Assembly (NCBI GenBank): GCA_965644295.1 | Contig: CBFFRP010000182.1 | Location: forward strand, 62,001-126,000 | DNA from: Paraphysomonas bandaiensis | Lineage: Eukaryota > Protista > Chrysophyceae | Length of the DNA stretch: 64,000 nt | Direction: 5' to 3' | In this document: positions 7,117-42,298 of the stretch, one piece after another | Layout: each line of letters opens with the position of its first letter | Position numbering within the stretch: the first letter of the stretch is position 1 | Made by a program: the position numbers and the translations under genes | Notes under the pieces: model-generated | Told to the model about the DNA's origin: nothing | Database searches by the model: none | The model's input: only the letters and a program-made list of their open reading frames with translations

Positions 7117-7579
7117 CTGTGGCATATATGTAAAAATGTTAGTTCTCTGTGTGATCGTCTCCATTGACTTTATATATTCGGTTCGATATTAAATGTCGCA
7201 ATACTATGTTATGACTTCAGATATAACATACTGCACATTAACGATAAATATGGAAAATGGAAAGTACTAAAGTTCAACTGTATTTGTACATGTATTGCAA
7301 GCTCTTACGTATGTACCTAAATCGACATACGATATACAAACTTAGAGCAAGGGGACACTACGTTTCTGTTGACGCTAGTCTAGAGTCCATAAACTACAAC
7401 TCATATCTTTGATGTTCATTTAATTGTACATTGTCATCATGCTTCCCTATGACAGTTAATCAAAAATCAATACCCGAACAGATACAGGATACAGTTCCTG
7501 GAAATTCAATTTCTATGCACAATAACAGACTGTGTTATTGCTAACTTCGTAAACACACCACCACTAGGAAATATTAAAT

Positions 7580-8999
7580 TCATTCAAAATCTTCATCAAA
7601 ATCTGAGACACTATATCGCCATCCAATAGGGTTATCACTCGTTTCCATTCTAGTGTCTGAACTGTTTTTGTGACTGTCTTGTCCCGAATTGTTCTCGTTT
7701 TCATTCCTACTCCAGGTACTGAAAGCTCCTCCAGAAAATACAGTCATCGCTATACCAAAAAAACTACCACTTCGAGCTCCTGAGCTCGATGATTCTCTCA
7801 GGAGAGGGTCAGACGAACAGAAACATTTATTTAAGAGACCTTTCCAGTGTTTGATCACATTCGGATTAACGCCATAAGCCACTGCATCCAGAAACCCCTG
7901 ATGAAAAGCAAAGTGAATACTCAGATCTGAAGTAAACAATGAAATATAGTGTAAGTCGAAGCTCTATTCATGTATCAAGGTAAAGAGTATGGGGTTGCAT
8001 ACGCATGACAATGCTCTAAGTCACCTGTAACCTCAACGACACTTCTGCCAATAGTACAAGGGTACGGTAGTGGTGATTGAAGACCTGCAATATTCTACAA
8101 CGGCAATACTGTGATATCGTGGCACGGACACATACATCAATTTATGCGACACATAGACAATTCAAATGACAATTACATTCATAAGGATACCTTCTAGTAA
8201 AGGGCAATATATATACGGCAACCAATATTATAGGGTACCAGTAGAGACGACTAACTACCCTCTGCGCCTTCTTCCGAGAAGTCCCAACGGAATCGTTCTG
8301 ACACAATGATTTTGTTTTATTTCAAACGTATATATGTATAAGAGCTGATACACAAGCTACAACATGGAAACGTACTTTCCAGCCATTAATATGGCCAATA
8401 ACACGACTGTAGACAACAGATATGTAGCCTACTCCAAGCACAAGAGGCGCATAAAATGTTACCACTTCCCACATATACCCTATATGATTCCGAACTTCGT
8501 TTCCTTCCTCAAAGTCAGTTTTGATCCAGCAGTATATATCACCATCATTTCTGCCATAGCTGTCAGTTGTTAATGGAAGAGCTGCGAGAACTAGTGGCGT
8601 TCCCCACACAAAGGCGTAGTGCCACGTTTCAATTTGAAACTGAATATGTCTCTGATCAAACAAGTCTCTTCTATAACCATCAAATATCCTGCGAATTGAA
8701 GTGGAGACAACAATAGCGGTACAAATGGTTATTAGAGAGAAGTAAGATACAGTGACAGCTGATGTAATACAGAGATGGCCATAGAAGCTACTCCCAATAA
8801 CTCCTAGTGCACCAATAGCAAGCCACACAGCAAAAACCTAATCAGTTTACTGACATCAACTCATCATGAAGGATCATATGGTGCCTACCTGTGAAGTGGT
8901 TCGAGATTCAGGGAATATAAAATATGTGGATATAGTGAACAATGAGCCTGATATAGTCAACGCTATAGCAACGTATAGTGCTACATAAGGCAGCCACAT
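7580..8999 (-). CDS. Second cAMP-receptor-like 7TM GPCR, multi-exon
   Basis: Exon 1 encodes TM1 (MWLPYVALYVAIALTISGSLFTISTYFIF) followed by a GT donor. Later HYAFVWGTPLVLAALPLTTDSYG..YCWIK, FYAPL, RLLRYPII and QGFLDAVAYG, typical of the CAR-like family. Confidence 0.75.
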
Positions 9000-11834: not shown

Positions 11835-14800
11835 ATGAGTAGTATTGATGCCAAGCTGTGAGTATCTTCAGTCTTATAGAGTTATTATTCATATATCTGT
11901 TACAGTGAGTCTCTGAAGTATGAGAAGGAGTTAGCTGAGACTCGTCGGCAAGAAACACTCAAGACTTCACCTCTACTTAATCTGAAAGAGTCGTACAAAC
12001 GGATAATTGAAAGATCAGAAAAGTATCGTGTGTCTGTTTTACGCAATGTAGCAACATTTGGTAGGCTTTGTAGTCACTATATAGGTGTACTTATTTAACG
12101 AATATCGCAGCGAAATTAACTGATCAGTACATGCTATCAGCCGCTCAAAATATGGAGGAATTGGTATTGCCGTATGGAAGTGTTCTTATACAGCAGGATG
12201 ATGTTGGCGATTCGGTATGAATCTTGCTTTTATTATGCTATTACATGACATAATGATGTATTTGTATAGTTTTATGTAATTCAAGAAGGCCTTGTAAGTG
12301 TAACGGTAAGTTTCTGCTCTTGTACAATGTCGACTCTAACCATCAGCAGCGCAAGGTAAATCCAAGTGATCCCACGGAAACACCTAAAGAGCTTGCGAAG
12401 CTTGGGCCTAATGCGTATATTGGGGAAATTGCCTTGCTTACACAGGAGCCGAGAACGGCTACTGTTACTGTGATCAGTCCTATGGCAAAGATCCTTGTAA
12501 TGACGAAGGCAAAGTTCGACCTTGTAATGCAACAGTGCAGTGCACACCTTTTCAGCGACAAAAAAGAAATTGGTAGGGAGGTTGTCAATAAAGTCCCTCT
12601 TTTCGCCGGACTTTCTGGGTCCAAGAAAAAAAGCATTGTTGACTCAATGCGACCAATGAACTTTCTTCCCAACACCTATATTTGCAGACAGGGGTCCAAT
12701 GGAAACACCTTCTATATAATAGCAGAGGGACATTGTAAGGTTACTGTGAATACGGGGAAAGATGGCGAGAAGGATGTGACCAAGCTCAGACCGGGTGATT
12801 TCTTTGGTGGGTAATGTTTATGTCTATATGCCTGTGTGCAAATGCACGTTGTTGTTAGCATTGCTGACACTCTGTGCAGGAGAAGTAGCCCTAATCGAGC
12901 CATCCAACAAACGTACAGCGAACGTAATTTCAGTAACAACAGTGAGCTGTATGACACTCAGTCGCCACGATTTTACCCAGTTGCTGTCTAATGTGCGCAA
13001 CACTCTTATTGAGAACTCGGCAGTAAGGACACAGGTTTTGCGGAAGGTAAAAAAGGATTCCAGGGGAAGAGGCCAAGTTGGTAAACGACGAGTCACAGGA
13101 TTTGACGAAAATAATCAAAAAGCTTTCGTATTGGTGTCTGGACTACTAAGGCGGATGGCGAGGTCAATGACTGAGTCTCTATGGCTATCTCTCTACTCCC
13201 GCTTTTATAGAGAAGTAACACTTAAGCCGGATGCTATTGAGCAGTACGGGGAGGTCGCCAAGGCAGTCATAGTCATGCACAGCAATAGAGAAAACACTGT
13301 GGCAGCAATAATGCATCAAGTACACGTGATTGGACGCTCTGACCCTAATGACCGAACAGCTGCAGAAAACCAGTTCATGTATGGCGTTATGATGCAGAAA
13401 AACCGTCTTCGGTATGTGTGATGAGTGCCTCTTTCTGTAACTGCGTTAACATTTCTGTATAGTGAGAAGATATGCAAAGGGTGGCCACTATATCAGTACC
13501 GTCTTCTGTGTAGACAGATACGTATTATAAGAGTCAAACCTCTCTCAAAGGTAATGTCTTATGTGCCTGCTTTTTTTCTACATATTGATAGGTGTAATTC
13601 AGGTTGTCGAGGCTGGTACCAATGGGACCTCTGCATATGTGATCCTTCGCGGTTGTGTTCGTGTTTTTTCATCACATGCTGTTGAAGGTATATTTGTTCT
13701 GGTTCACTTGTCATGAATTTATATTTAATTTTGATATTCTTGGGTGCCCTTCTACATTTGATATTTTTAATAGGAGGTACGAAAACTTTCCTCAAGTATG
13801 AGGAAGATCTTTATCCAGGCGACATATTTGCTGAGGCTGCGCTGGATGGAATTCGGTCACGATTGACTACTGTACAAGCAGTAACGAACTGCGATCTTGC
13901 AGTTATCGAATATCAAGACTACACCACCGCAACAATAGAACACAGTCAAAAGGAGTCAGTTGATGATAGATTTCAATTCTTATCCCGAACTACTCTATTG
14001 CGACACTGGGATGGCATTGAGCTCTATCGAATAGCCAGTGTTATGGTGAGAGAGGAGCTTACCAAAGGATCTGTCATTATAAGAAAAGGGGATGTCTCGA
14101 AGAAATTGTGTTTCCTTATGGATGGTAAGATAGACGTTGTAGTTGGCCTTGGTCCTCAGCAGCTTCAACACGTTGTTACGACCATCAAGCAAAACGAATG
14201 TTTTAATGAATCTGGTATACTTACTTACATGGCCCACCAGCAGTCAGGACCTGGACTGTTCGACAGATCCGAGAGTTTTGCTGAGACATGCTATGCTGTT
14301 GCCGGTTCCCACGTAACCGTGCTATGCCTTCAAGAGGCAAGCTATAATTTAATCGATCAAGGTACTGTAGAGAGAATCTTGCACGCATTCAGGGAAAAAA
14401 ATATATGGCGTGTTGCACGTATGAACACGCTACGCGCTGAAAGCAAAAATATTAACAAGTGGAAGAAAAAAATTCAGTTTGAGAGGCAGCTTCAGGATGC
14501 TAAATGGCAACCTCCACCCCGCATCAAACAAATCAAGAAAGACGTTGTAATCAATTCTCTTGATGATATTCCACAACTTTTGGATTCAACGATTGACCCT
14601 ATGTTAGCAATATCAACATGTCGTAACATGAAAGAAATCAAAATGGTTCAGGAATCTATTCGTGAAGCACACAGACCTAAGAGCGCACGAGTGGCAAGTA
14701 CACGAAAGTATTTGTCTTGCGCATCGACTTCGTTGAAACCTCTCGGGCCGAAGCGCATGTCTTATAGCAGGTCGATGGTAGACGATCCCACAGTGGAGGG

Positions 14801-15029
14801 CAAATGTGAATCATCTACTCTGCCCTTTCGTGGATCTGCAACTCTTCCGGCAGTATCTGTTCGACGATCACTAGATATTGGGAGTGATGTATCGGAGGGG
14901 TCTCTGCAATTACCTTCGCGACATTTGATGGGATCAGCTCATATACCATCTGCAAAATCTTTTTGCGATGCATTGAATGCTCAAGAAAGTAGGTTTAAAC
15001 CATGGGGACTTGCTTCGCCTGAGAAATAA
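11835..15029 (+). CDS. Protein with about 4 cyclic-nucleotide-binding domains (PKG/PKA regulatory-like, no kinase domain seen), multi-exon
   Basis: Phosphate-binding cassettes GEIALLTQEPRTATV and GEVALIEPSNKRTANV, plus degenerate ones (AEAALDGIRSRLTTV; FNESGIL). Start is approximate. Confidence 0.8.
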
Positions 15030-22411: not shown

Positions 22412-22954
22412 TCACCAACTAAATTTATCTCTACTATACCAACCATTTCTAGTACGATCTTACATCTTCACTATCTTGTACAGTCAATAAATTTCAGTTT
22501 CAGAACTACAATTTTTATTATATCATTGGTTCTCATAATACGATTAGCTACTACTGTATTTTTTGAGTAACGGTTATAACAAATATATTAGAAACTACAG
22601 CTTTTAATTGCTCACAAAACAGCAAAATTCAACAACAATTATCACTGCATAACACGTCAATACTTAGTATTTTGTACGCCATCATCCACCATCACGCATA
22701 ATATGTATCGCAATACTTGTGAAGTATTAGGCATGTGCGGAAGCTACAGTTTGTATTTCAATTATGTGACGTCACGAAGTGTCGCAGTAATTCCAAGTGT
22801 ATGAAACCAGCAAATTAGATAATAATCTGTACTACTGAAATACATCATATATATGTTTTCAATAGTGATAGCTGTACTAATCTAAGCTTCTACACTGCTT
22901 TTGGCTACACTAAAAGCATCTACTCCAGAAAAAGCGATATATACAGCATGCATA

Positions 22955-25900
22955 TCATCCGTCAGTAAACTCCTCGTTCATCAACATTGGTGTAAGTGCC
23001 AACGTGCCTCGGCACTCTGTATTCAGGACGCAAGCTTCAAAAGTTTTCTCAAACCTACGATTCGATGACACTGCAAGTTCTGAGAGAGAGATTTCCATGA
23101 ACCCAACAAACCGAGGAGAATCCGATCCAGCCACAGCGCGAGCCACTTGAATTTTCACTGTCTTCCACGCAGCGGTTTCGGAGGAATAGCAATTTTCAAC
23201 GAGTATTTCAATCGGATCAAATAAAACCAGTGAAGTTTTATCTTGGTACATGCAGTTCGTTGACTCAATTTCAAGAGCACCACATGGTGACCACACACGA
23301 AGCAATATTGAATCAAGTACACGGGATGAAAACGTAAGACCACGAATTTCAGTTAGTTCTATAACCAGCTTCATACTATTTGGATCACGTGGCTTTCCCA
23401 CAAATTCAGTCATTCCAGCATTACTTGATCTCCGAAAGAAAGGCGAGTTCACATCATAACTTGCTTTAAGAGGACTAGTTGTGGAATTCACCTTCACTAT
23501 TTCCAGAGCAGGAGTTTTCGTTAAACTCTTTTCCGGAGAGATTTGTATCGAATCATCCACTAGAAGCACGTTTCTTACTTTTTCAATAGCTTGGTAGACA
23601 TCATTTTGAACATCAGCCAGCGTGTGAATAAAGTTGGTCTGCATTTTCTCGACATCATTATGAAATAGGGCTTTCGTTATATCGTCAGCACTTTCATCTG
23701 CAACGGTGAGGCACATTGCTTTGTTAGTCGGCAGCCAAGAAATATCAGAAGACTCGATACATCTTCGAACATACTGTTCCAGTCCATCATCATCATCCTT
23801 ATCTTGTTCCCAAATATATATGATGAAATATAGATAGTTCCACATATTATGTTCTGTAGTGATATGAGTCGCGAAACCTTCGGACGCCTTATCACGGTCA
23901 AAGATTTGCTTGTCAATACCACATATGAAACACGTTTCGAGAGTATCTCTCAGACGATCCATTTTAGCTAGGCGGAGCTCAGAAAATGTATCAACTGTGA
24001 TACCTCTGATCACATTGAGCAAGACAAACCGAATCGCAATGTCGAATGCAAAATAAAAATACCATTGGTTGTTGATTCGCTGAGTCATATCTTCGTTAAA
24101 GTCACCACTCCGACCATAACCTACGCAAAATTTGAAGCACGAATACAAGGATTTGCAGTCATCGGGATATGGCAGAGCTCCAGCCGAATTGAACTCCAGG
24201 AACTGTAATACAAGAATGATCAGAGAAATTTTTCTTACGAAGTCAACAACCTACCAAAATCATGGAAAAAATATACATCACAACTACACACAGCAAACAG
24301 GCCATCATAAGCTGCTTGATGGGAGTAAACACGGCGATGATAACATCACGTGCGTATGAATTTTTAACAGCTATATCCAAGAGCAGAAGTGTCAGAATAT
24401 AATCTAATCTTAAACTGGCAACTGCAAGTATAACGTATACAAAGTAGTACATAGTCAAGGGGTCAAGAGCGGTATAGATTACAGACATGACCACACCAAC
24501 ACCAGTGGCATAGTGAGTTATGTAATGTACAGGTGCCCTTACAACAAGGAAGAGGACAAGTGTGAATGATGAAAAGGTGATTTGCAGAGCGTTCAAAGTA
24601 TTTACAGCAGATCTGGCATAGGATGGAATGTCTGGATCTCCGCATGAAACTTCTGTTCCTTCACCCTCATCATCTTCTGGAGGCACATAATCTTTAAAGC
24701 ATTCGCTGCCATCATAAAAGACAAGTAATATCATGTTGATAGCACAGCATAAAGAAAACGTAATCCATGTGGCTCGATTCTGATTACGCTGCGTAAAAAC
24801 CTTGCTCACATATATTTCTTTCAAAAATTTCTGGTGTTTAAGTTCGGTGTAAATAACGGATGCTCTGCGATACATATCCAGCAGCTTCTTCTCCTGAGAC
24901 GACCTGTCAACATACTCGACAAAGTTAGCCTTTGAGGAGTCATTGAGGTCCCGGCATATAAACGGAACATTGAAAAATCGCCGTTGCAGCTCGCCACGCC
25001 ATACAATCTCAACGCTGGCTACATTTCCTCTAAGTTTTCGTTCTCCTTTTCTATTAAATATCTCCAGTTCATTGCGCAGTCCCGGCTTGAAATCACACAA
25101 CATTTGCAAAAGCACGAGACTTTCTGTCTGTAAAGACAATTCTATTTCTAACAGTTCCTCATCTTTGTTTTCATCTCCAGGATCAGGCTGTTGTGGATTA
25201 CATAAAACTTCAATAACATCAAGATGAATCACGCTCAGTATGCGTTCATAAACCGCAGTCTTTTGGCCTTGACCTTCTAGTAGTCCTTGAAATATGTCAA
25301 TCGCATTCTTTTTCAACTCTAACTCCGAGATAATATCGTCAGCTTTGTGCGATTGTGCACGAAGTTGATGATTTAAAATTTCCACAAGAGACGTATTCAA
25401 AGCGAAATGGTCCTGGTTTCCAGCACAAGGTCCCTGAATAACTTCTAGTACAGTTGCTCCAATAGCTAATCCAGCTTCATTAGAGGTTTGGCATGGGAGG
25501 CGATTCAGACATGCCATATAGGCAACCATATCATCTAGTAAATTTATCGAAGAAAATTTGCCTGCTTGTTCTCGCATTATATCCTGATTTGGAGTGTAGT
25601 GACCTTCGCACATTAGCTGCATAAACCTCACAGCAATAATATCACCAGGTATCTCAAGGTCGTCGTTTACATCAGGGTTAGACATTCCGTGCCAATCATG
25701 CCAGGATATTAGGTCTTGAATGATCTTACGCAACTCCAAAAAGAAAAACTCCGAGTCAACACTACAGAGATGTTTATACATCGTCTGCTGAACTTTGAGT
25801 GCACCGCCTTCTTTAAAAAGCATTGCAACTCCCAGTCTAATGCTCTCAAGTACCAACTCGTGGTCAATACCGGGAGAGATCAAGTCCAAACAAAGTGTCG

Positions 25901-28900
25901 TTACCCCGCAAGCATTCAGTGTTTTAACAATACTCTCACAAGCAATATCTTGCTCTTCTCCACCTTCATCGTCGCGCTGGTATATAGTCATTCCCCATAC
26001 ATCCTCAATCATAGTTCGAAATAATTTTATAATCCAAACAGCTGTTCTAGTATATCTCCCCGATAGACGTTTTTCTCTACCCGAGCTGTGTGTAACAATC
26101 TCTGAACCGCTTCTAATGTGATCCACTAGTTTCTTAATAAGTGGTTCATATCTCACTGTACTGGTTGACGTCCTGTCCGAAGTTGACGGTAGAGCGTTCA
26201 ATTTAGCCAAAAATAAACCAGTTTCACGCTTTATTTCTTCCTGAACAATAGGGCTCGAATTAATGTACTCCAGAAATTGAGCTATGGTTGACTTGACTCT
26301 GTCCTCATCTAACTCGTTTCTGATACAGATCCTATCTGTCGGAAGCATGCGGGGAGAAACGATGTCATCCTGCAGTGGTTGTCCTTTCGCCTTCGACAAT
26401 GCCTCCAGAGCCCCATAAAAATAGGTCTTATGTTTTGTACTCAGAAGTGGAGAGTTCATTTCATAAACTGTTTTAATATATGAGAAGAGATCATTTATGA
26501 TACCATCAATTTGAGAAAGCGTAAAACTGAATGTGCTCTTCTTCCCACCTAAAGTCAATGAATATTCTCGTCTAAAGGAAACGGGTTCAAAATACATCTT
26601 AAAGAAGCCACATGTTAGCATCGCACAGACCACGATAAATTCTAATCTTTGACGTGAGCTTGTTGGAGCATCCCAACCGTTAGCTTGAACTTGAGCGAGT
26701 TCACGTCTTGCTGTGGAAAGAACTTCCTTGCAGTATGCCATTAGCTTCCACACTTGATCATATTGTGCTAGCCCGGGAATACGCATTTCAACATCCAGTA
26801 CACCGTTATATAGAAACAACCCCGTTCGAATTTTTATTAGTAGTATACACTGAGGGTCTAATATAGCATCAATGACATCAACAAATGGAAACATAGCCTG
26901 AACTTTTGTCTCAATCGTGGTTACATTATAAACACCTATAGTACATCCATCAAGAGTTCGAAGAAGTTCGATGTGATATGCCAATTCGGCGGCAATGTCA
27001 TCGCAAGACACATCGTGTTTGTGTAAGTACGGCTGCATCAGCTTTACCTTCTTCGAATATTCAAAATGCGTTACTGGGCAAAAATATACTAGTATCTTTT
27101 TTTGACGGAGTGGAGACGATATTTGCTTGACGATTTCGTATTGGTTCTCCAGTATATTTTTTCCACCCGCAGATGTTATCGAGCTCAAAAGCGATAAATA
27201 CTGAGGAAAACGTCCTAACTTTGAGATATTCTCGGCAAAATCAGCAATATAGAAGGCCGGCACTCGTCGCATTAAGGATTCATTTTCCATGAAAATAGAT
27301 TTAACAACTTTGTGACTACTTATACCCTTATCAACAGAGCTGAGAAAAAAATCCAGCTGCTCGAACAGTTGTTCCTGATTTACAGGGTTCTTGAATGCAT
27401 ACCAGAACAGCAAATCGTTACATGCAGCCATAATAGCTACGGTATTGCGGTTGGATGAAGACATTGAGTTATCATTCAAAGCCATTGATAGCTTACTTAA
27501 CAGTTTCCAGCAAACATCCCAGCACCCGAAGTTGCGCAACAAACACTGCATCTCCAAGTCTTCTTCGTAATCATAATCAAATTCCAAAACGTCACGTCGC
27601 ACTCGGCAATTAGTTTTCAACGTGTCCAATATCGAGCAACATTTAGAGGATATTTCCTTGTCTTTGTCCTGGGTCCCATTACCCCACAACGCGAATGTTT
27701 CTATGAAGCGATCCAACTGTAAAATAATCGAATTTACTAATCTATACTGCGACTCTCTAGATGGAGAGCACAGCAATTGGACACTGGAACAATTAGACAA
27801 CATTATCGAAGTTCTCGTATGGTGTGCCATAAGCAGATCTAACACACTCTGCACAAGACTAGGATTTACATACATGAGAAGATCGAGTAAATAGTTATCA
27901 TATTCATTGTTGCTGACACTCAATTCATTTGCTTGTGCCAACACGGTAGAAAACACATCGATTGCCTTCTTTTCACATCCAGGAGTGATGGTAAAGGCGG
28001 CGTTTCCTCCACACCACTGATAAAATCCACGCAGAAGTAAAGTTAAATTCCGATTGTCCACTAGTCTCTGTACAGAGAATAAGGTATCAACCATCTCAAC
28101 CATAGTACTCAGCTCATGCGCAGGCGCTGTTCGGTACCTGGCAGGAAGACGCCATTTCTCTTTTTCATCAATATCATCAGGTTCTTTAGGCTTCAATGCC
28201 CTCGCCGCACGAATTATGCGAAGAAGACGCAGCATTCGCAAAACACGTAAACTTGACGAGAAATCACCAAAAGAACCCAACACATCCTGACTCGAAAGTA
28301 GAGCAATATCCAACACAACGACAAATATGTCCAACTGAACATATGGGTCATAAAAGAACTTTGACCAATTCTTGCGTACGAAATTGTGACAATACCCTCT
28401 TAGAGTGACTTCCGCAAGAAATATAAACCCAACTACAATATTAGTGATTAAAAATTCTATACCTTCAAGATTATATGCGATCTGGACAAGAGTAATAATT
28501 GCAGAAATAATGACCAGTAGAAGTATCAATACAAGCTCTGTTGTAGACTCCAGGAACAAAAGCACTGTCTTCTGCCAATATGGGACGACATTTCTTAAAT
28601 TTTCTAAACGTCCAAGTGCTGACTTCTGACGCGACAACTCAGCTGCACTCATGAACTCCTTCCTATCGATATCATGATTCTTCCTATTAAGTGCCGTCAT
28701 AATCGGAACAATGACATCATTCAGCATCTCTATCGATCCATAGAAGTGCAAGTCAACCAGTTTGTGAAGAATTGAAACGATGCTGAGTGAATGAGCCTCC
28801 CACGGCCCACCATCCGTCTTGATATGCTTCAAATGATTAGACAAGAACTGCTGCAAAATTGCAAATCGATAAAGTCTTTCACCATCAACAGAGGCTACAA

Positions 28901-31736
28901 TGTTTGCTTCATTTAAACATGAAAATACTCTTGACAAGTACGGTAATCTCTGCGTCGACTCAGATTCTCGGTCTACATAGAGTGATTGAATCAAGTTTGA
29001 AACCGCACGTATCAGATTAGAAGTACCGGCAGTTTTATTACCCATAGATACATTGAGCAATATTGCAATTAAATAATCGTATGGGTATAGCTTTTCCATT
29101 TCTGAAATTCCCATATAATTTCTATCCAAACATATTTCAGCAGCTAAAAAAATTTGGCCAGTAAAATAGTCGAGTACGGCTTCCTTATTGGCCACTGTAA
29201 CATTTACATCATTCAACTTTGTCGACTCCTTAAATGACGACTGATTCAGCACCGACCGCTTCCTCAATTTCGACGAATCTAGAAACGAAGCTGATCGACT
29301 GCGTTTAATAACGGGACCAGTTGGCTTTGTAATATTAGTTGTGATTGAGCTTAACGAGCCAGATACTGCAGCGAAATTGCGTTTTGCCCGGTTAGATCTT
29401 GCAAACTCGGAGAGGGGCACATACTCCTTTCCAAACAACCTCTGAGGAGTTAAATCGCTGTTTTCGGTCCTCCAGGTAATAGTGAGCTCTGGTATTCCTT
29501 CAGTAAGAATTTCGACACCAAGCATGATGACATCATCATACTTCGAGGGAATGTAAATGGATGGGAAAAAGAATTCTCTGTCATAATCTAAACGTGTTCT
29601 TTTGGAGCAATTCACTTTCATAAAGATCTTGTCCAAAACAGGAAATATGGAGTCCATCACATAACCCTGATTTCTGCTTATCGCATGGCCAGAGCAAGAG
29701 CAGAACGACTTTAACATTGTGAAGTACATGCTCTTCATGTTCGACTTTGGGTTACAAATTTGGTCCGTAAAAATGGTCACTTCATCCGCACCGATATGCT
29801 CAGTCTGGAGCTCCAAGTTGTCACTTAGCATTTCCTTCACAACTTCAGCAGCAATGTGCTCTACACCCACCCATCCTAATACAACATGCATGTGTCCGGC
29901 AACATAAATTTGATTCAAAGTGTGCCTTTTCACACACTGCAGCAAAAGCCGCAACAGCATCGACGACACTTGGGATGCCATTTTCAGAAGATTTCTACGG
30001 CATTCATCGAAGTCCAAATCAAAATCATGTTCATCATCACTGTTATCACGTTTATCTTCATCTGAATTACTATTGTCCGGCTTGACAAGGGGTAGCAGTG
30101 AATTCAGTAGTAACAAGATAATTCCTATTGTTCCTTGCTCGCGAAACATGTTTTGTCTCCGCTCAATGACAACATCATCACGGACACACTCTCCAAACTC
30201 ATTCACAACGTCGTCACTGTCGGCATCAACGTCCACATCTTCGACGATGTCAGAAATTGCGTATCCCTTGAGATATTCAATGCATTGTCCGATAACCTTG
30301 TAAAACTCTTTGTCTTTTGCTACATTTAATGAAGGCCATAGCCTCTCCGTGTCCATTTCAGTCGGGTCCATATCGTGGAAGTCCTCCATCGCATTCAAGT
30401 ATTCTTTCAGAAAGTTTCGAATGGTACAGCCGACGTACACATCAAGTGGAAGATTTGCTTGTGTTCCTGTCTTGTTACGTTCCACCTTTTCTGCGTCGTA
30501 CCGAGATATGAACAAATATATCGCATTAGACTTCTGATAAGTGCATTGGCATTGGTAGTGGGATATGTTGGCCACTTCTCGCAGTTCTCCTCTCTCAAGA
30601 TACACATGACTATGACTTATTTGAACCGCTTTCTTATCCTCAAGAAAAGCTTTGGTGCTATGAAGTACATGGAATGAGAGCAAAGTGCCTTTATTCGAGG
30701 GTTTGGTGGCCACAGTGAACTTGTGCTTCCCGTCGTCATCGATCTCCACGCACATATACTTCCCAGTGTTGACATGCTTAAGTCTCACAACATCAGCTTT
30801 CCATTGAACTAGTCCACCACTTATTATCGCTTTGGTTTCTATAACCCACAAAGAATTGCTGCTGACCTCCTTCTCAATGGGCTCCAATACAATTTCACCC
30901 TCCTCCGACAACTCCATTATACTATCGTCTTCACTGACTATATCCGGCATGTCAGAGCCATGGGGACATATGATTGGTGGACGCTGGAACACACTAAGCA
31001 CAGAGAGGGTTTCTGGGTCGGACATGTATACCAACTCAGACGCGTGGATAGCACTCGAATCAGTTGTATCGAGAGCACTCTGAAAGATATTCAACAGCCA
31101 GCAGGTCGCTTCCATGGATGAATTAACCTCCCTCAAGGAACTGGAGTACCCTGACTCTGCACAATGTAAATATTCACTCGGGTTACGTTCGGACACCCGG
31201 AACTTGATCTCTGAGTTGGAATGGACTTGGTCGCCCTGTTGGTTAATTTTGAATTGTGGCTCAATCACCATCCAAGAGTCCAAGCTTCCGGTCGGGTGCA
31301 AGTTTACTTTTATATTCGCTCGTTCCTGCTCGGCAATCTCGGTCCCAATAACCGTAATATATTTTTTAGACTTCAAGTGGAGAAGCTGCACGGCATCACC
31401 GAAGTGTATTGCGGATCCAAATTTCAGGCGCATATACTGCTCATTCAACACGTCTTCATTAGCTAGACCTCGCCTAAGTGCTTCAAGGTGTCTTGTCGAA
31501 CTACTATCATTGATTTCTCCTTCACTTGTATTCATCTCAAGTTCAGTTAAGAATTCATCAAGTTCAAGTGCAGCAGAGTATTGTCGTGGTAAGCATATCT
31601 GAAATAAATTATCCTCAAATGATTCCATCTTTCCAACAACAAGATCATCTCCTAATATCCCCTCTGCACATATATAACTCTTTAGTTTAACATTCTTAAG
31701 GGTTACAATATCTCCAAATCTGAGTGTATTAGACAT
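22955..31736 (-). CDS. IP3 receptor/RyR-superfamily Ca2+ release channel with an inserted voltage-sensor domain and a C-terminal C2-like domain (about 2900 aa, intron 24203-24254)
   Basis: N-terminal LRFGDIV, MIR repeats (VQLLHLKSKKY, VRLKHVNTGKY), RIH (RQNMFREQG), RIH-assoc (FMQLMCEGH..NQDIMREQ; EVIQGPC.GNQ), six-TM pore, DTFSELR, CFICG...HNMWNYLYF. Confidence 0.92.
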
Positions 31737-33314
31737 TTTAAAAGATCGAATATAATTAAATATTCGTTAATATAAGAGTTAACTAAGATAAGAGTGATAT
31801 CATTGACAAGGAGCCCAATGAACACCAATAAAAGGCTAATGAAATATCAAATCATATCACTTATGATCCATTACTTGCTAATAACATCAATGATGATGTT
31901 TATATAGTCTCTGCCCTCTACGTTTCCTGGACACTGTCATAAGGTGAATGATATAAGGGCTCATTGTACTGGTCGTATGGTATATATGTATATATATATG
32001 TACATGCTTATGTATATAGATATACGCAAATACACGTACCGTAATGTATGAAATGTAACGAAACGAAGTCCCGAAATGGTGAAGTATTTTGGACAATACT
32101 GGTCCGATATACGGATCCCATATGTGGGATTAGATGAAATCTGCTGTTTCTGGGAATACTGCTCGTAAAAACCACCCTTTTCATATATTTATGAAATATG
32201 TTGAATATCAAAAAACATAATATACCTAAAAACCATGGATTTCTATATTCCACACAGATACGTCAATGGACATGCCATATCTATGTGGACTTGTGACTCA
32301 ACGGCTTGCTGTATGTTTTCTTTAGATAGGACGAGTTCTTGGCGCTCTGATGTGATGCTCATGTATTCGTTACATGAAAATGCTTTGATGCCATTGTAAT
32401 CATTTCGGGGTGCAGTGAGAATGGAATCCTGCTCCACACTCCATGACTTATATATGTTCTACATGCAACATATATGGATTGGGACTGTTATATTTGTGTG
32501 TAAGTTCTGTCATACGAACCATTGTATCATGCTGTAATATTTGAGGCACTAATATATTTGCTCAATGTGGTGCCGTTTCAATGGTCAGATGTGCTCAAAT
32601 AAGTCTTATATGTTGGACTCGGGCGACTAAACACCAGCATCCACGACACATGATTTAAGGTCGTATATGTATTTGAAAAATGATACAATATACAATTTAT
32701 GTAGTCGCAGTCGGTTGTTGTAACATGATTACTTTGTAATTTCTATATATGAGTGTCATTTTATTCACTGCAATCTTACTAGCAAAGAGCTTATTGCTAC
32801 TCAATACTGATCAATGATCAATAAGGTATATATGTATATGAAATCATTTTCTATTTTCACTGAGTAATACTAGGAGAGCCTGGGGACTGGAAGCCAATAA
32901 CCTCACCATTTGAGTGGCTCTTTAGGTTTCTACTTCCTACCTTTCCTTTGGCCATTTACTAAGTAGTTAGGTGTACCTCAAGCAAACTATTATTAATATC
33001 TGTAACCAATCATTAGTTCGTATGATGTTATTAAACACTACTGCATTCTTCAATTAAAGGTAATAATTCAAATACCTTAGAACCTTAGGAATACAGCTTT
33101 TAACTGCTTAAGAACTACGAAACAGCAAAACTCAACTTAAATATTAAATACTACGACAATTATGACTATCGTGCTACCTTCACAAAAACTGGCGGCGAAT
33201 AAATAGCTTCGATAATATTAGTTCATGCACTCATTAATATCTTAGTTAAAGAAGAAAACGAGTTCAATTTTTCTCTAAGTCATACAGTAAACGGAATTTA
33301 CACACCAACTCAAT

Positions 33315-34267
33315 TTAAGCGTTGAGCTCAACAGCCTTGGCAATGCAAGCATCGCAGTCCATATCCTCCAGAGAGTCAAATAGAGACTTTCCCTTAACCT
33401 GGGGATCAACGCTCCATTCCTTGATGGTCTCAGCAGTAATTCCAGCTGCAAGGAGCTTGGCTCCGAAGGAGTCATTCTCAAGGTCGCCCTTGAGCCAGTT
33501 CATGCGCTCGGCGAGGGCTTCGAAAGGAGAGGCGCTAGCATGGACACCATTGTCACCAGTGTTAGGGACCTCAGAAAGGCCGAGAGACTGCCAGTTAGCG
33601 AGAATCTTGCCACGGATGGACTCGGCAGGAGCGTCAGCGGGGTCGGTAGGGCCAAGAACCTTTCCACGGAAGTCAGCCCAGGAGAGGTTGGAGGAGTTCC
33701 ATTCAACAACGTAGTAGTGGATAGAAGTGCCAGGGGCGACGAACTTGGAGCGCATGCTCATGAAAAAGCCGTTGAACACATAAATAGCGTCCTTGCCCTC
33801 AATGGTATCGATGAGGCCGCAGTAGAACCCGCCACCAAACTTGATGAGCTTGTCGGCCTTCTTGGCCTTGGCCCAAGCAGCGTCAAGGGCATCAGCATCA
33901 ATCTCCAAGTATGCGCATGCATCAAGAGCATTGTAGACCTTGTTCTGGGCAAGGGCATCTCCCCAGCTCACTCCAAATTTGGCCTCGAACTTATCAGCAG
34001 GGATAGGAAGCTGAACAGGTTTCAAGAGGGTGGCTGTTGAAAAAAGAATAAGTGACACACTTTGACATAACACCAAAAAACCTTACCCTTGGAGGCAATG
34101 GCGTAGTAATGCTGATCAATAAGCATGCCGTCATTGATCTGCTGACCAGTGAGCTCACCCTCGCTGAGGATGGTGATACCTCTGGAGTTGAGCTCCTCGG
34201 TGACAAGGGCCTGAGTAGCCGGGGTATTGGCGTGGGGCTTGATGAAAACAAAAGCACTGTTATCCAT
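33315..34267 (-). CDS. Divergent nucleoside-diphosphate-kinase-like protein, 2 exons
   Basis: NSAFVFIKPHA, IDQHYYAIASKA, WADFRGKVLGPTDP..A..SIRG, NGVHASAS (catalytic His). Strong codon bias suggests high expression. Confidence 0.8.
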
Positions 34268-34858: not shown

Positions 34859-36493
34859 ATGTACTTTACCTCTGATCATGTTGATACAAAAGATAATAGA
34901 AATCATATCACTATAATTGATGAATATGTTAATGCTATAGTTCATCACATATGTGATGTATCTTTTGGTCCACTTGTTCATGATAATCCCACTATCATAT
35001 CTGCCTTACGAGCTGCTATCCCTCTATATAATAAAATGTTAGATTCGACACCACCAAAAGGCAGAAAGATGAAATATGCTCTAGAGGCTGCGAGATCATT
35101 AGGTGTTGACACCCCGAGTATGGAAAAGGCTGATGAAAGGAGATTGTGTTTTGAGGCAGCATTGGTTATGGTACTGTCATATAGACCCGAAGCTGCCGAG
35201 ATAAAATATAGTAGTGTATCAGAGCTTTGTGAGTCTTACCCTGAATTCCTGGATGTGGATCATATCGAGCAAGTAAAGCTATTGAATTTCCGCAACTTTA
35301 TGGCGATTTCACTTTTACTTCTTCCTCCTAATCACAACCGTTCCCATCTAATGGACGTTGTGACAAGAATAACAGAAGGTCGGAATGTGAAATATGTCAC
35401 TGGCTCAGGAGCGGCAGTGACGACAAGAAGACGGGTTCTCATCTATCAGAGAGAAGGTGGAGTAGTTCCTACTGTTCGGCCGCCGAGGAAATCTCAAGCT
35501 ACATCAATTGCGCAACCTGAGAGCAGTACATCTGAGAGAAAAGAAGATCATGACAACCAGCTGAATTATACATCATCTGAATTGCGTCAGGAGTTCCGTT
35601 CAACTGGAGATCGGCCTAAAGTCGGCGTATCTGGTGTTTCACGCTTAGTTCCCACGCCTCTTGTGCATATGCCGGTTCTTGCCGTTCAACCTCCTCTTCA
35701 AAATTACCCCGTGCCTGGTCCCCTGTTTTCTCCTTTTCCGCATATAATACCTTTTGACTCCTCTCGAGAGAACGAATTCTACGCGTGGCTAAGTGTTGTG
35801 TGGGAGGTGGGTGTGTCTGCGGAGTCGTACGGTTGGGGTGGCACCTTTTTAACTGCCCCTTGCGTAAAGCCAGAGACAGACTACGCTAATAGGGCTGCTA
35901 TGGCTTTTGCCAAGGCACTCGAGTTGTACTTTCATATCATAGTTCTGGCGGGCTATGACCCAGGCGAGGGTAGGGATGGTGTCGGTATGGGACAGTCCAG
36001 CTCGTCTGCACCGATTTCAGCCACTACATATTACCCTACTGTCCCTCTGACTGAGGGTAGACGACTGTACGATCTCTTTATGTGCACAACGACTGTCGTA
36101 GACAGCGCGATACACAGAGAGCACCTTTTAGCGATGGGGCTGTACTTCGGAGTGCGGCGGTGTATGAGTCTAGACCAGATCCAATATTTCGGAGATGTAT
36201 CTGCTAGTATAAGTGGTAACGTGTGCGTGGAGTACGCACAGGCAGTCGAAGTGTATTTTTCCCTTGTCTCTAAACCTAGCCCACGAGCAGATTCGGCTCT
36301 ACTCTTGAGGGCACAGAGTTGTATGATGGAGATCTTTTTTCGCCTCAGCTCTGCACTGCAGCTAGGTGTCGTCCGCTTCGTTGACACAAGTTGGGGTTCT
36401 CTCAGAGACCAGCTTTTCACCGATTTCGTTGTCATGTCCAGCTTTCGAGGTATGTACATGACAAATCCAGACGAAGCACTGGGTGAAGATTAA
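34859..36493 (+). CDS. Hypothetical protein, 544 aa
   Basis: Long intronless ORF with a globular basic segment (TEGRNVKYVTGSG..TRRRVLIYQREG), a Pro-rich linker and a helical C-terminal half. No family recognised. Confidence 0.7.
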   Translation: MYFTSDHVDTKDNRNHITIIDEYVNAIVHHICDVSFGPLVHDNPTIISALRAAIPLYNKMLDSTPPKGRKMKYALEAARSLGVDTPSMEKADERRLCFEAALVMVLSYRPEAAEIKYSSVSELCESYPEFLDVDHIEQVKLLNFRNFMAISLLLLPPNHNRSHLMDVVTRITEGRNVKYVTGSGAAVTTRRRVLIYQREGGVVPTVRPPRKSQATSIAQPESSTSERKEDHDNQLNYTSSELRQEFRSTGDRPKVGVSGVSRLVPTPLVHMPVLAVQPPLQNYPVPGPLFSPFPHIIPFDSSRENEFYAWLSVVWEVGVSAESYGWGGTFLTAPCVKPETDYANRAAMAFAKALELYFHIIVLAGYDPGEGRDGVGMGQSSSSAPISATTYYPTVPLTEGRRLYDLFMCTTTVVDSAIHREHLLAMGLYFGVRRCMSLDQIQYFGDVSASISGNVCVEYAQAVEVYFSLVSKPSPRADSALLLRAQSCMMEIFFRLSSALQLGVVRFVDTSWGSLRDQLFTDFVVMSSFRGMYMTNPDEALGED

Positions 36494-40219: not shown

Positions 40220-42298
40220 ATGACCGGCTATCGCGGCCAGAGTGGTCAGGGTGGTAATCAAAGCCGAGGTAGTCAGGGTGGGTATCGAGGCTCTGGGGGC
40301 CGGGGTGGTAATCAAAGCAGGGGTAGTCAGGGTGGCTATCAGGGCTCAGGTGGTCAGAGTGGGTATCGAGGCTCCGGTGGTCAGAGTGGGTATCGAGGCT
40401 CTGGAGGTCAAGGTGGTAATCAAAGCCGGGGTGGCCAGAGTGGGTATCGAGGCTCTGGAAGTCAAGGTGGTAGTCAGGGCTCAGGTGGTCAGAGTGGGTA
40501 TCGAGGCTCTGGAGGTCAGGGTGGTTATCAGGGCTCAGGTGGTCAGAGTGGGTATCGAGGCTATGGAGGTCAAGGTGGTAATCAAAGCCGGGGTGGTCAG
40601 AGTGGGTATCGAGGCTCTGGAGGTCAAGGTGGTAGTCAGGGCTCAGGTGGTCAGAGTGGGTATCGAGGCTCTGGAGGTCAAGGTGGTTATCAGGGCTCTG
40701 GTGGTCAGAGTGGGTATCGAGGCTCTGGAGGTCAAGGTGGTAGTCAGGGCTCAGGTGGTCAGAGTGGGTATCGAGGCTCTGGAGGTCAAGGTGGTTATCA
40801 GGGCTCTGGTGGTCAGAGTGGGTATCGAGGCTCTGGAGGTCAAGGTGGTAGTCAGGGCTCAGGTGGTCAGAGTGGGTATCGAGGCTCTGGAGGTCAAGGT
40901 GGTTATCAGGGCTCAGGTGGTCAGAGTGGGTATCGAGGCTCTGGAGGTCAAGGTGGTTATCAGGGCTCAGGTGGTCAGAGTGGGTATCGAGGCTCTGGAG
41001 GGCAGGGAGGCTTCCAAGGCTCAGGTGGTCAGAGTGTATTCCAAAGCTCTGGAGGGCAGGGAGGCTTCCAAGGCTCAGGTGGTCAGAGTGTATTCCAAAG
41101 CTCTGGAGGGAAGGGAGGCTTCGAAGGCTCAGGTGGTCAGAGTGTATTCCAAGGCTCTGGAGGGCAGGGAGGCTTCCAAGGCTCAGGTGGTCAGAGTGTA
41201 TTCCAAGGCTCTGGAGGGCAGGGAGGCTTCCAAGGCTCAGGTGGTCAGAGTGTATTCCAAGGCTCTGGAGGGCAGGGAGGCTTCCAAGGCTCAGGTGGTG
41301 GTCAGAGTGTATTCCAAGGCTCTGGAGGGCAGGGAGGCTTCCAAGGCTCAGGTGGTCAGAGTGTATTCCAAAGCTCTGGAGGGCAGGGAGGCTTCCAAGG
41401 CTCAGGTGGTCAGAGTGTATTCCAAAGCTCTGGAGGGAAGGGAGGCTTCGAAGGCTCAGGTGGTCAGAGTGTATTCCAAGGCTCTGGAGGGCAGGGAGGC
41501 TTCCAAGGCTCAGGTGGTCAGAGTGTATTCCAAGGCTCTGGAGGGCAGGGAGGCTTCCAAGGCTCAGGTGGTGGTCAGAGTGTATTCCAAGGCTCTGGAG
41601 GGCAGGGAGGCTTCCAAGGCTCAGGTGGTCAGAGTGTATTCCAAAGCTCTGGAGGGCAGGGAGGCTTCCAAGGCTCAGGTGGTCAGAGTGTATTCCAAGG
41701 CTCTGGAGGGAAGGGAGGCTTCCAAGGCTCAGGTGGTCAGAGTGTATTCCAAAGCTCTGGAGGGCAGGGAGGCTTCCAAGGCTCAGGTGGTCAGAGTGTA
41801 TTCCAAGGCTCTGGAGGGAAGGGAGGCTTCCAAGGCGCAGGAGGAAATGATGGTTTTCGTGGTTTTGGTGGCAACCAGGGAAATGGTCAATCGGGTGGTA
41901 GTCAACAGGGCGACAATGGGGATTTCATGTCGGCAGGGAAGAATCCTTTTGCTAGAGGTGGATTTGGCTCAGGCCAAGGTGTGGCACCCTCTGCCAAGAA
42001 CTGGGGAGATGCGGTCGGAAATAGTGGTAGTGTCTCGTCAGTTCCGCTTAAAAGTACTGAAGGCATTGCTAAAGACATTGGAATTACTTTATCGAATAAG
42101 CTTTCCGAGGAAGAAACACAAGATGATGTCAATACTGGTGCCGACAGAAGCGATACCAGTCACAACCAGCAAGCCGATGGTGTTGATGACTATGGGTCGT
42201 TTTCAAAGTATCTGACGCCCCCGGAGTATAGTGATTACAGCCCAGCTGACATTGAATATTTAGAACAGATTCCGTTGTATATGCCAAGAGTTAGATAA
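40220..42298 (+). CDS. Gly/Ser/Gln-rich tandem-repeat protein
   Basis: About 54-bp repeats encoding GGQSGYRGSGGQGGYQGS, then GGQSVFQGSGGQGGFQGS, followed by a unique acidic C-terminus in the same frame. An upstream exon is possible. Confidence 0.75.
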   Translation: MTGYRGQSGQGGNQSRGSQGGYRGSGGRGGNQSRGSQGGYQGSGGQSGYRGSGGQSGYRGSGGQGGNQSRGGQSGYRGSGSQGGSQGSGGQSGYRGSGGQGGYQGSGGQSGYRGYGGQGGNQSRGGQSGYRGSGGQGGSQGSGGQSGYRGSGGQGGYQGSGGQSGYRGSGGQGGSQGSGGQSGYRGSGGQGGYQGSGGQSGYRGSGGQGGSQGSGGQSGYRGSGGQGGYQGSGGQSGYRGSGGQGGYQGSGGQSGYRGSGGQGGFQGSGGQSVFQSSGGQGGFQGSGGQSVFQSSGGKGGFEGSGGQSVFQGSGGQGGFQGSGGQSVFQGSGGQGGFQGSGGQSVFQGSGGQGGFQGSGGGQSVFQGSGGQGGFQGSGGQSVFQSSGGQGGFQGSGGQSVFQSSGGKGGFEGSGGQSVFQGSGGQGGFQGSGGQSVFQGSGGQGGFQGSGGGQSVFQGSGGQGGFQGSGGQSVFQSSGGQGGFQGSGGQSVFQGSGGKGGFQGSGGQSVFQSSGGQGGFQGSGGQSVFQGSGGKGGFQGAGGNDGFRGFGGNQGNGQSGGSQQGDNGDFMSAGKNPFARGGFGSGQGVAPSAKNWGDAVGNSGSVSSVPLKSTEGIAKDIGITLSNKLSEEETQDDVNTGADRSDTSHNQQADGVDDYGSFSKYLTPPEYSDYSPADIEYLEQIPLYMPRVR

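What the first reader, a model, noticed from the sequence alone, without database searches (positions are those of the whole stretch)
28185..28565. Complete voltage-sensor domain (S1-S4) inserted into the cytosolic region of an IP3R-like channel
Seen: inside one uninterrupted exon (about aa 1060-1185) there are four TM helices. S1 is LVLILLLVIISAIITLVQI, S2 is IVVGFIFLAEVTLR (F-x-x-E charge-transfer centre), S3 is FFYDPYVQLDIFVVVLD (conserved D), and S4 is SLRVLRMLRLLRIIRAARALK with six Arg plus a Lys at every third position. Established: this is the voltage-sensor signature of Kv/Nav/Cav/VSP/Hv1, and canonical IP3R/RyR have no TM segments here. From recalled IP3R1 sequence, the flanks LVDLHFYGSIEMLNDV and ELSTMVEMVDTL correspond to LIYFGFYNFSDLLRL and VMDTKLKIIEIL, so the insert sits in the variable ARM1 loop near the SIII splice site, about 1100 aa before the channel's own six-TM pore. 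Inference: a Ca2+-release channel gated by membrane voltage. The sensor could sit in the same membrane, or in an apposed one (plasma membrane or vacuole) at a contact site, acting as a single-chain analogue of DHPR-RyR excitation-release coupling. I am not aware of this architecture being described.
Basis: partly seen in the sequence, partly recalled or inferred. Interest (0 to 1): 0.95.

Follow-up and report, generated by a model that had tools for sequence, protein, structure and literature searches.

The report
Calcium-release channel with built-in voltage sensor
A marine single-celled stramenopile expresses an IP3-receptor/ryanodine-receptor-type channel with a complete, well-conserved voltage sensor spliced into its cytosolic scaffold, a design I could not find described and which may let membrane voltage steer a calcium-release channel directly.

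Summary
The gene is on the minus strand: exon 1 is 31736-24255, a 52-nt GT..AG intron follows, and exon 2 is 24202-22955, giving 2909 codons.

- **Domains.** Pfam finds Ins145_P3_rec, MIR, RIH and RIH_assoc, plus an internal Ion_trans match covering only S1-S4 at aa 1069-1181.
- **Expression.** A spliced 9.3-kb transcript contig carries the insert in frame with no differences.
- **Fold.** AlphaFold2 gives a four-helix sensor matching Nav, Cav and KCNQ sensors. It sits in a scaffold that superposes on human IP3R3 residues 723-1215.
- **Conservation.** 124 of 144 long homologues carry the sensor at the same site. All 83 aligned sensors keep the charge-transfer centre, and 73 keep all six S4 charges.
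- **Copy number.** This genome has eight such genes among ten RIH_assoc loci.
- **Literature.** Eight full-text searches and two voltage-sensor reviews describe nothing like it.

Voltage control of gating, and the membrane holding the sensor, remain inference. This scan already noted the architecture on paralogous DNA of this genome. Two of those notes were followed up with the same conclusion.

The parts
22589..31914 (-). Inferred extent of the mRNA (about 9.3 kb, one intron)
   Evidence: Spliced contig of run X1 is 9274 nt. Record positions 2615-8363 lie on 29300-23500, skipping 52 nt. Extending colinearly gives 31914..22589 (9326 - 52 = 9274).
24255..31736 (-). Coding exon 1 (2494 codons, ATG at 31736)
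24203..24254 (-). 52-nt GT..AG intron between pore helices S5 and the pore loop
   Evidence: joint in X1 and in polyA metatranscriptome X5, absent from genomic contig X7; sequence.
22955..24202 (-). Coding exon 2 (415 codons plus stop): pore loop, S6, CxxC...HxxxxH zinc-finger linker and a C-terminal tail
   Evidence: in frame with exon 1; weak Ion_trans S6 match.
31074..31733 (-). Ins145_P3_rec domain (aa 2-221)
   Evidence: E 2.2e-24
30618..30914 (-). MIR domain (aa 275-373)
   Evidence: E 1.1e-11
29619..30176 (-). RIH domain (aa 521-706)
   Evidence: E 5.8e-27
28719..29183 (-). Scaffold helices before the insert (aa 852-1006), homologous to human IP3R3 723-883
   Evidence: HMMER. Z 24.7, rmsd 2.8 A over 355 residues for the whole scaffold piece.
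28191..28580 (-). Inserted voltage-sensor module (aa 1053-1182: S0 plus S1-S4)
28548..28580 (-). Pre-S1 amphipathic helix S0 (aa 1053-1063) with conserved W-Q...L-x-F-L-E-S
   Evidence: helix 14-24. W 69, Q 63, E 64, S 71 of 83.
28473..28544 (-). S1 (aa 1065-1088)
28374..28460 (-). S2 (aa 1093-1121) with F1106, E1109, R1113
   Evidence: F 82/83, E/D 83/83, R 76/83.
28281..28367 (-). S3 (aa 1124-1152) with D1136 and D1143
   Evidence: D1136 83/83, D1143 77/83.
28197..28262 (-). S4 (aa 1159-1180), with six Arg at every third position; K1182 follows
   Evidence: 73 of 83 homologues have a basic residue at all six positions.
28140..28190 (-). Short post-S4 tether (aa 1183-1199) leading into the scaffold's own conserved P-x-R-Y motif
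   Evidence: pLDDT 53-80; the R-Y...P...E-L motif is also present in sensor-less homologues, so it belongs to the scaffold.
25371..25631 (-). RIH_assoc domain (aa 2036-2122)
   Evidence: E 4.8e-16
24255..24776 (-). The channel's own membrane domain, helices S1-S5 (aa 2321-2494)
   Evidence: hydropathy

Best explanation
This is an expressed gene for a roughly 2909-residue channel of the IP3-receptor/ryanodine-receptor superfamily. A complete Cav/Nav-type voltage-sensor domain (S0-S4) has been inserted into its helical scaffold. The site corresponds to human IP3R3 between residues 883 and 1058, in the central-linker region just before ARM2. The domain name comes from the IP3R literature and my recollection of its boundaries.

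The sensor has four membrane helices, so the chain leaves the cytosol and returns to it. The rest of the scaffold keeps its topology.

**Shown**
- The architecture is real.
- It is present in mature mRNA.
- The sensor folds as predicted.
- The gating charges and charge-transfer centre are conserved across a family of more than 120 sequence clusters, and in eight paralogues of this genome.

**Inferred**
- The sensor responds to the potential of the membrane that holds the channel. Both membrane parts would be inserted co-translationally at the ER, so this is most simply the same membrane.
- S4 movement would be passed through an 18-residue tether to the scaffold near the ARM2 hinge. Rigid-body movement of ARM2 primes IP3R opening.
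- Voltage would therefore act on the cytosolic gating machinery, much as a voltage-sensing phosphatase couples S4 to a cytosolic effector. It would not act through an S4-S5 linker on the pore.

**My odds**
- Architecture real and under selection: 0.97.
- The sensor senses voltage: about 0.75.
- Voltage modulates channel gating as described: about 0.55.
For: - **Domains.** Pfam order is Ins145_P3_rec, MIR, RIH, Ion_trans (S1-S4 only), RIH_assoc. The same order is precomputed for homologue P0017 on an independent ENA assembly.
- **Transcript.** Spliced contig X1 runs unbroken and without differences across 24255-29300. The same splice joint appears in a polyA marine metatranscriptome, and a metatranscriptome contig lies on S1-S2.
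- **Sequence kinship.** A profile of 83 inserts matches Cav1 at E 2e-33. The best single stretch is domain III.
- **Fold.** AF2 of the insert gives pLDDT 84.6 and pTM 0.74 with S0-S4 helices. The top 50 Foldseek hits are all voltage sensors. In a 569-residue model (pLDDT 87.5) the flanks superpose on IP3R3 723-1215 at Z 24.7. The insert superposes on Nav1.7, Cav3.2, CatSper and KCNQ5 sensors at Z about 14-15, rmsd about 2 A over about 120 residues.
- **Conservation.** 124 of 144 long homologues carry the sensor between the same flanks. All 83 aligned keep the aromatic and acidic residues of S2 and the acidic residue of S3. 73 of 83 keep all six S4 basic residues. The insert is as conserved as the whole protein: 56% against 54% identity to P0001.
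- **Own genome.** Eight sensor-bearing loci among ten long-frame RIH_assoc loci.
- **Tether.** S4 ends 18 residues before a scaffold motif that sensor-less homologues also have.
- **ARM2 movement as the priming step.** PMC13433952.
Against: - No functional data exist.
- In solved IP3Rs this part of the scaffold sits well above the membrane (recalled from published structures, not measured here). The tethers are short: about 12 and 19 low-confidence residues. How the sensor reaches the bilayer holding the pore is therefore unexplained.
- ER membranes are usually thought to carry little potential, so the relevant membrane may not be the ER.
- A fold-together test of the sensor with the channel's own membrane helices gave no verdict.
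- The sensor has been lost at least three times within the family, so the channel can work without it.
- Whether the N-terminal domain still binds IP3 was not resolved.
Confidence: 0.6

Rival explanations
1. The sensor works across a contact site. It sits in an apposed membrane (plasma membrane, vacuole or plastid-ER) while the pore sits in the store membrane. This would be a single-chain analogue of DHPR-RyR coupling.
For: - The insertion point lies in the scaffold, far in sequence from the pore (about 1140 residues).
- By recollection it also lies away from the store membrane in solved IP3Rs.
- The short tethers make reaching back to the pore's own membrane awkward.
- The plasma membrane has a real, changing potential.
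Against: - One polypeptide whose two hydrophobic parts are both inserted co-translationally at the ER translocon would be expected to end up in one bilayer. No single-chain protein spanning two membranes in this way is known to me.
- There are no data on localisation.
- The tethers are equally short for reaching an opposite membrane.
Confidence: 0.12
2. The four helices are kept as a structural membrane anchor, tether, or sorting or oligomerisation module, and voltage plays no role in gating.
For: - Sensor-like domains without voltage function exist, for example S1-S4 of TRP channels and of IP3R/RyR themselves (established knowledge).
- The module has been lost several times without loss of the channel.
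Against: - A mere anchor would not need six regularly spaced basic residues, which 73 of 83 homologues keep.
- Nor would it need an invariant aromatic/acidic/acidic charge-transfer centre, kept in 83 of 83, across proteins only 20-56% identical in this stretch.
Confidence: 0.15
3. The sensor itself conducts (Hv1-like proton path or omega current), or reads lipid or pH rather than voltage. This would add a second permeation or sensing route to the channel.
For: Isolated or charge-depleted sensors can conduct (review PMC10651576).
Against: - S4 is fully charged in most members, which normally seals the gating pore.
- S1 has no mid-helix acidic residue of the Hv1 type.
- The closest sequence and fold relatives are Cav, Nav and KCNQ sensors, not Hv1.
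Confidence: 0.04
4. Artefact: an assembly chimera, a retained intron or transposon fragment, or a pseudogene.
For: None found.
Against: - The same DNA occurs in independent genomic contigs, and a spliced transcript matches with no differences.
- Base composition is uniform.
- The open frame is intact over 2494 codons.
- The insert is conserved at the same site in 124 homologues from many assemblies.
Confidence: 0.01

Closest known systems
Animal IP3 receptors (human IP3R3, rat IP3R1) and ryanodine receptors
   Same: - N-terminal Ins145_P3_rec and MIR domains, RIH repeats and RIH_assoc.
- A C-terminal six-helix pore with a CxxC...HxxxxH linker.
- The scaffold around the insert superposes on IP3R3 723-1215 at Z 24.7.
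   Different: - They have no membrane segment in the scaffold.
- They are gated by IP3/Ca2+, or by Ca2+/DHPR contact.
- Here a 130-residue voltage sensor sits between the equivalents of IP3R3 883 and 1058.
- The N-terminal profile matches RyR2 slightly better than IP3R1, and IP3 binding is unresolved.
Voltage-sensor domains of four-domain Cav/Nav channels
   Same: - S1-S4 fold.
- F-x-x-E-x-x-x-R in S2, N-x-x-D in S3, and basic residues every third position in S4.
- Best profile match is Cav1 domain III.
- Best structural matches are Nav1.7 and Cav3.2 domain IV.
   Different: - It is not followed by S5-S6. It is followed by about 1140 cytosolic residues before an unrelated pore.
- There is no S4-S5 linker.
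Voltage-sensing phosphatase (Ci-VSP/TPTE) and the voltage-gated Na+/H+ exchanger SLC9C1
   Same: A canonical sensor is coupled to something other than its own pore. In VSP, S4 drives a cytosolic effector through a short linker. TPTE2 also appears among the profile hits. This is the closest analogue for how it may work.
   Different: - Those sensors are terminal or appended modules. Here the sensor is inserted inside the effector's scaffold, with both ends tied to it.
- The effector here is a tetrameric ion channel of another superfamily.
- SLC9C1 has been called the only known transporter regulated by a sensor (PMC10620092 abstract).
DHPR (Cav1.1)-RyR1 excitation-contraction coupling
   Same: The functional outcome may be the same: voltage-sensor movement opens an IP3R/RyR-type release channel without need for Ca2+ entry (PMC13095418).
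   Different: That system uses two proteins in two membranes with accessory proteins. Here there is one polypeptide, and probably one membrane.

Membership tests
S4-type voltage-sensor domain (Pfam Ion_trans, S1-S4 part) | Significant match to the family profile over S1-S4 | tested here: met
   36.9 bits against cut-off 25, profile positions 6-112 of 241; family profile against Cav1, E 2e-33.
S4-type voltage-sensor domain (Pfam Ion_trans, S1-S4 part) | Four-helix membrane bundle | tested here: met
   (AF2, pLDDT 84.6 and 87.5); all best matches are solved voltage sensors, Z about 14-15, rmsd about 2 A; hydropathy.
S4-type voltage-sensor domain (Pfam Ion_trans, S1-S4 part) | S4 with basic residues at every third position (four or more) | tested here: met
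   six Arg plus one Lys; 73 of 83 homologues have six of six, and none has fewer than three.
S4-type voltage-sensor domain (Pfam Ion_trans, S1-S4 part) | Charge-transfer centre: aromatic and acidic residue in S2, acidic residue in S3 | tested here: met
   F1106, E1109 and D1136; present in 83 of 83.
S4-type voltage-sensor domain (Pfam Ion_trans, S1-S4 part) | Voltage-dependent charge movement | not testable with these tools
   Needs gating-current or voltage-clamp fluorometry measurements.
IP3R/RyR superfamily of Ca2+-release channels | N-terminal Ins145_P3_rec and MIR, RIH repeats, RIH_assoc | tested here: met
   all above the curated cut-offs.
IP3R/RyR superfamily of Ca2+-release channels | C-terminal six-helix pore domain followed by a zinc-finger linker | tested here: met
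   five hydrophobic helices at aa 2321-2494; exon 2 has S6 and CxxC...HxxxxH. The exons were examined separately and the joined protein was not built.
IP3R/RyR superfamily of Ca2+-release channels | Scaffold fold equivalent to solved receptors | tested here: met
   Z 24.7, rmsd 2.8 A, 355 residues against IP3R3 723-1215.
IP3 receptor proper (IP3-gated) | Basic IP3-coordinating residues in beta-TF2/ARM1 | tested here: inconclusive
   no single-sequence match for aa 220-620; the profile aligns only short pieces and matches RyR2 at least as well as IP3R1, so the residues could not be placed.
Canonical voltage-gated cation channel (6TM, sensor contiguous with pore) | S4 joined to S5-S6 of the same repeat by an S4-S5 linker | tested here: not met
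   the sensor ends at aa 1182. The next membrane helix is at aa 2321 and belongs to the IP3R-type pore.

The most novel reading that the evidence does not exclude
This family is a new class of excitable-membrane protein: an IP3R/RyR-type Ca2+-release channel gated directly by membrane voltage through its own sensor. It would give marine stramenopiles one-protein excitation-release coupling. It would also reveal a new way to couple S4 movement to a pore, through the cytosolic ARM/CLD gating ring.
Probability: 0.45. Interest if true: 0.95.

Novelty: new variant of a known kind. Interest (0 to 1): 0.86.

Why it matters
Voltage sensors are known to drive only a few effectors: their own pores, a phosphatase, a proton path and one transporter. 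Release channels of the IP3R/RyR superfamily are thought to sense voltage only indirectly, through a separate plasma-membrane channel.

A conserved, expressed family with the sensor wired into the release channel's own gating scaffold would add a new effector class for S4 sensors. It would also offer a natural experiment on how the IP3R cytosolic ring transmits force to the gate.

It bears on two further questions:
- Which internal membranes of protists carry signalling potentials.
- How abundant marine stramenopiles produce fast Ca2+ signals.

The isolated domain and the full channel can be tested directly by standard electrophysiology.

Tried and rejected
- **Word-indexed search with the insert region alone.** It returned nothing. 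This was a sensitivity limit, because the whole-length search and the exhaustive search found the family.
- **Fold-together test of the sensor with the channel's own membrane helices, as three separate chains by reference.** No verdict (score 0.00, controls not run). This is no evidence either way.
- **Foldseek on the isolated sensor.** It gave only weak E-values (about 1e-2), although every hit was a voltage sensor. The VIA-align second look on the larger model was clearer.
- **IP3-binding residues.** They could not be placed.
- **ESM Atlas look-up.** It gave only low-score leads, such as a haptophyte-labelled cluster with RIH_assoc plus Ion_trans.
- **Naming relatives through cluster members and contigs.** It gave almost no organism names.
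- **Rejected explanations.** These were chimera or artefact, retained intron, Hv1-like proton channel, and a one-off lineage oddity.
- **The 'diatom' label.** Other notes of this scan use it for this genome, but my one test did not bear it out. A silicon transporter of this genome is closest, among named sequences, to a chrysophyte's: Ochromonas triangulata at 66%.
- **Spliced protein.** The joined two-exon protein was deliberately not built or searched. The exons were handled separately by reference.
Full report
**Observation.** On the + strand the flagged stretch translates to noise. On the minus strand it lies inside one open frame of 2497 codons, 24243-31736. S1 starts at aa 1067. S2 holds F1106-x-x-E1109-x-x-x-R1113. 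S3 holds D1136 and D1143. S4 has Arg at 1164, 1167, 1170, 1173, 1176 and 1179, and Lys at 1182. Pfam gives, in order:
- Ins145_P3_rec (aa 2-221)
- MIR (275-373)
- RIH (521-706, two stretches)
- Ion_trans (1069-1181), matching only profile positions 6-112 of 241, which is S1-S4, at E 3e-9 and above the curated cut-off
- RIH_assoc (2036-2122)

Hydropathy places the channel's own membrane helices at aa 2321-2494. Base composition is even across the gene.

**Gene model and expression.** Laying public runs on 23500-29300 gave three kinds of evidence.
- A 9274-nt contig of run X1 skips exactly 24203-24254. This is a 52-nt GT..AG intron on the minus strand. Otherwise the contig runs without any difference or gap from 23500 to beyond 29300, straight through the insert.
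- Genomic contig X7 keeps the intron, so X1 is spliced RNA.
- The same joint occurs in a polyA marine metatranscriptome (X5). Another metatranscriptome (X4) has a contig on 28411-28569, which covers S1-S2.

No alternative joint that would remove the insert was seen. Exon 1 (31736-24255) holds 2494 whole codons. Exon 2 (24202-22955) continues in frame with the pore loop, S6, a CxxC...HxxxxH linker and a tail, for 2909 codons in all. The contig length fits a transcript from about 31914 to 22589 with this single intron. I did not build or search the joined protein. The exons were handled separately by reference.

**Is the insert a voltage sensor?**
- A profile of 83 homologous inserts (A1) hits Cav1 channels in the PDB at E 2e-33. 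The best stretch is on domain III. Nav, Kv2, bacterial Nav and TPTE2 sensors follow.
- AlphaFold2 on that alignment gives pLDDT 84.6 and pTM 0.74, with a pre-S1 helix and four long helices. All 50 best Foldseek matches are solved voltage sensors, though with weak E-values.
- A larger model of aa 852-1420 (pLDDT 87.5) separates cleanly into two parts. The scaffold superposes on human IP3R3 723-1215 (Z 24.7, rmsd 2.8 A, 355 residues). Residues 1053-1185 superpose on sensors of Nav1.7, Cav3.2, CatSper and KCNQ5 (Z about 14-15, rmsd about 2 A, about 120 residues).
- HMMER aligns query 852-1006 with IP3R3 723-883, and query 1282-1354 with IP3R3 1058-1130.

It places the insert in what the IP3R literature calls the central-linker region before ARM2. 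That domain naming comes from PMC13433952, and the boundaries are from my recollection.

**Conservation.** A whole-length search found 156 homologues, the best only 54% identical. An exhaustive search with the insert alone found 163 proteins. The strongest are all long IP3R-like proteins or fragments of them, and ordinary four-domain channels appear only around E 1e-5.
- Of 144 long homologues that align on both flanks, 124 carry the sensor between them. Twenty have only 81-174 residues there.
- In the 83-row alignment, the S2 aromatic, the S2 acidic and the S3 acidic residues are present in every row. 73 rows have a basic residue at all six S4 positions.
- The insert is as conserved as the rest of the protein (56% against 54% to P0001).
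- On a FastTree of the region after the insert, the sensor-less proteins fall in at least three well-supported places, six by parsimony. One pair, P0011 and P0012, sits next to this gene's own clade. This suggests repeated loss, though the tree is unrooted.
- Sensor-less proteins keep the R-Y...P...E-L motif that follows the insert. That motif therefore belongs to the scaffold, and S4 ends only 18 residues before it.
- Named members include Ochromonadaceae sp. CCMP2298 and a chrysophyte 'H1'.
- More distant members reach 3700-4100 residues. One has two sensors and a DEP domain.
- Homologue P0017 has the same Pfam order precomputed on an independent assembly.

**This genome.** The profile finds six full sensor-bearing paralogues with open frames of 2224-2507 codons. 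Two more have an interrupted sensor. They are true paralogues, the closest being roughly half identical. RIH_assoc marks ten long-frame loci, and eight coincide with the sensor loci. Earlier notes of this scan describe the same architecture on those other pieces. Two were followed up with the same conclusion, so this is a repeat find on paralogous DNA.

**Organism.** Several scan notes call the organism a diatom. The genome has about seven silicon-transporter loci. The closest named transporter is from the chrysophyte Ochromonas triangulata at 66%. No diatom name appears among the close hits. I therefore describe it only as a silica-using marine stramenopile, possibly chrysophyte-like. A 2024 survey reports that diatoms lack IP3Rs (PMC11085791). 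That would conflict with this gene only if the genome were a diatom's.

**Mechanism.** Several things are shown: an intact, expressed, selected sensor tied at both ends to the gating scaffold. The N-side linker is about 12 low-confidence residues and the C-side linker about 19. The rest is inferred.
- Four helices return the chain to the cytosol, so topology is preserved.
- Both hydrophobic parts should be inserted co-translationally, so they most simply share one bilayer.
- S4 movement would pull on the scaffold next to ARM2. ARM2's 60-degree rigid-body swing primes IP3R opening (PMC13433952). Voltage would thus bias the same cytosolic ring that ligands act on.
- This resembles how a voltage-sensing phosphatase works more than how a Kv channel works.

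The main difficulty is geometric. In solved IP3Rs this region is not next to the membrane (recollection, not measured), and the tethers are short. A fold-together test of the sensor with the pore helices gave no verdict. Whether IP3 still binds is unresolved.

**Novelty.** Eight full-text searches combined IP3R/RyR/RIH terms with voltage-sensor terms and protist names. They found no description. None of the following mention it:
- two reviews that list the protein families with sensors (PMC10651576; PMC13095418)
- a 623-species voltage-gated-channel survey
- an oomycete IP3R review
- a comparative study of the ER Ca2+ system

Automatic domain databases probably already display the architecture, and I could not query them.

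**Verdict.** This is a real and conserved new architecture within two well-known families. Its function is untested but directly testable.

Noticed in passing
window 24203-24254: A 52-nt GT..AG intron splits the pore domain between S5 and the pore loop. It is the only intron in the roughly 9.3-kb transcript, judged from the contig length.
   Followed up: yes
window 22955-23700 (exon 2, last ~250 codons): A long C-terminal tail follows the zinc-finger linker. Another note of this scan calls it C2-like. Pfam found no family there at E up to 0.1.
   Followed up: partly
P0011:925-1007, P0012:968-1049: The closest sensor-less relatives have a clean gap of about 81 residues where the sensor would be, and keep the scaffold motif after it. 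This looks like a precise secondary loss.
   Followed up: partly
P0208 (4133 aa): A distant homologue carries two sensor modules (aa 1123-1255 and 1883-2027) and a DEP domain (1763-1814) in one IP3R/RyR-like protein.
   Followed up: partly
L007/L010 (G000:C426:43345-43879) and L008/L028 (G000:C409:8768-9361): Two paralogues of this genome have the sensor split between S3 and S4, with a stop or a frame change. This could be an intron inside the sensor or a decaying copy.
   Followed up: no
G000:C395:128689-129099 and G000:C144:125455-125757: Two further RIH_assoc loci of this genome gave no sensor match. They may be the genome's ordinary, sensor-less IP3R/RyR-like genes.
   Followed up: no
L033 (G000:C348:104000-106600): A silicon transporter of this genome is closest, among named proteins, to the chrysophyte Ochromonas triangulata (66%). 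A 77% partial hit labelled Symbiodinium microadriaticum is probably a contaminant label. The 'diatom' label in other scan notes may be wrong.
   Followed up: partly
window 13713-15029 (+): An open frame of 438 codons has a cyclic-nucleotide-binding domain. The other large frames near the channel gene (34859-36493, 40220-42298, 33315-34076) match no Pfam family.
   Followed up: no
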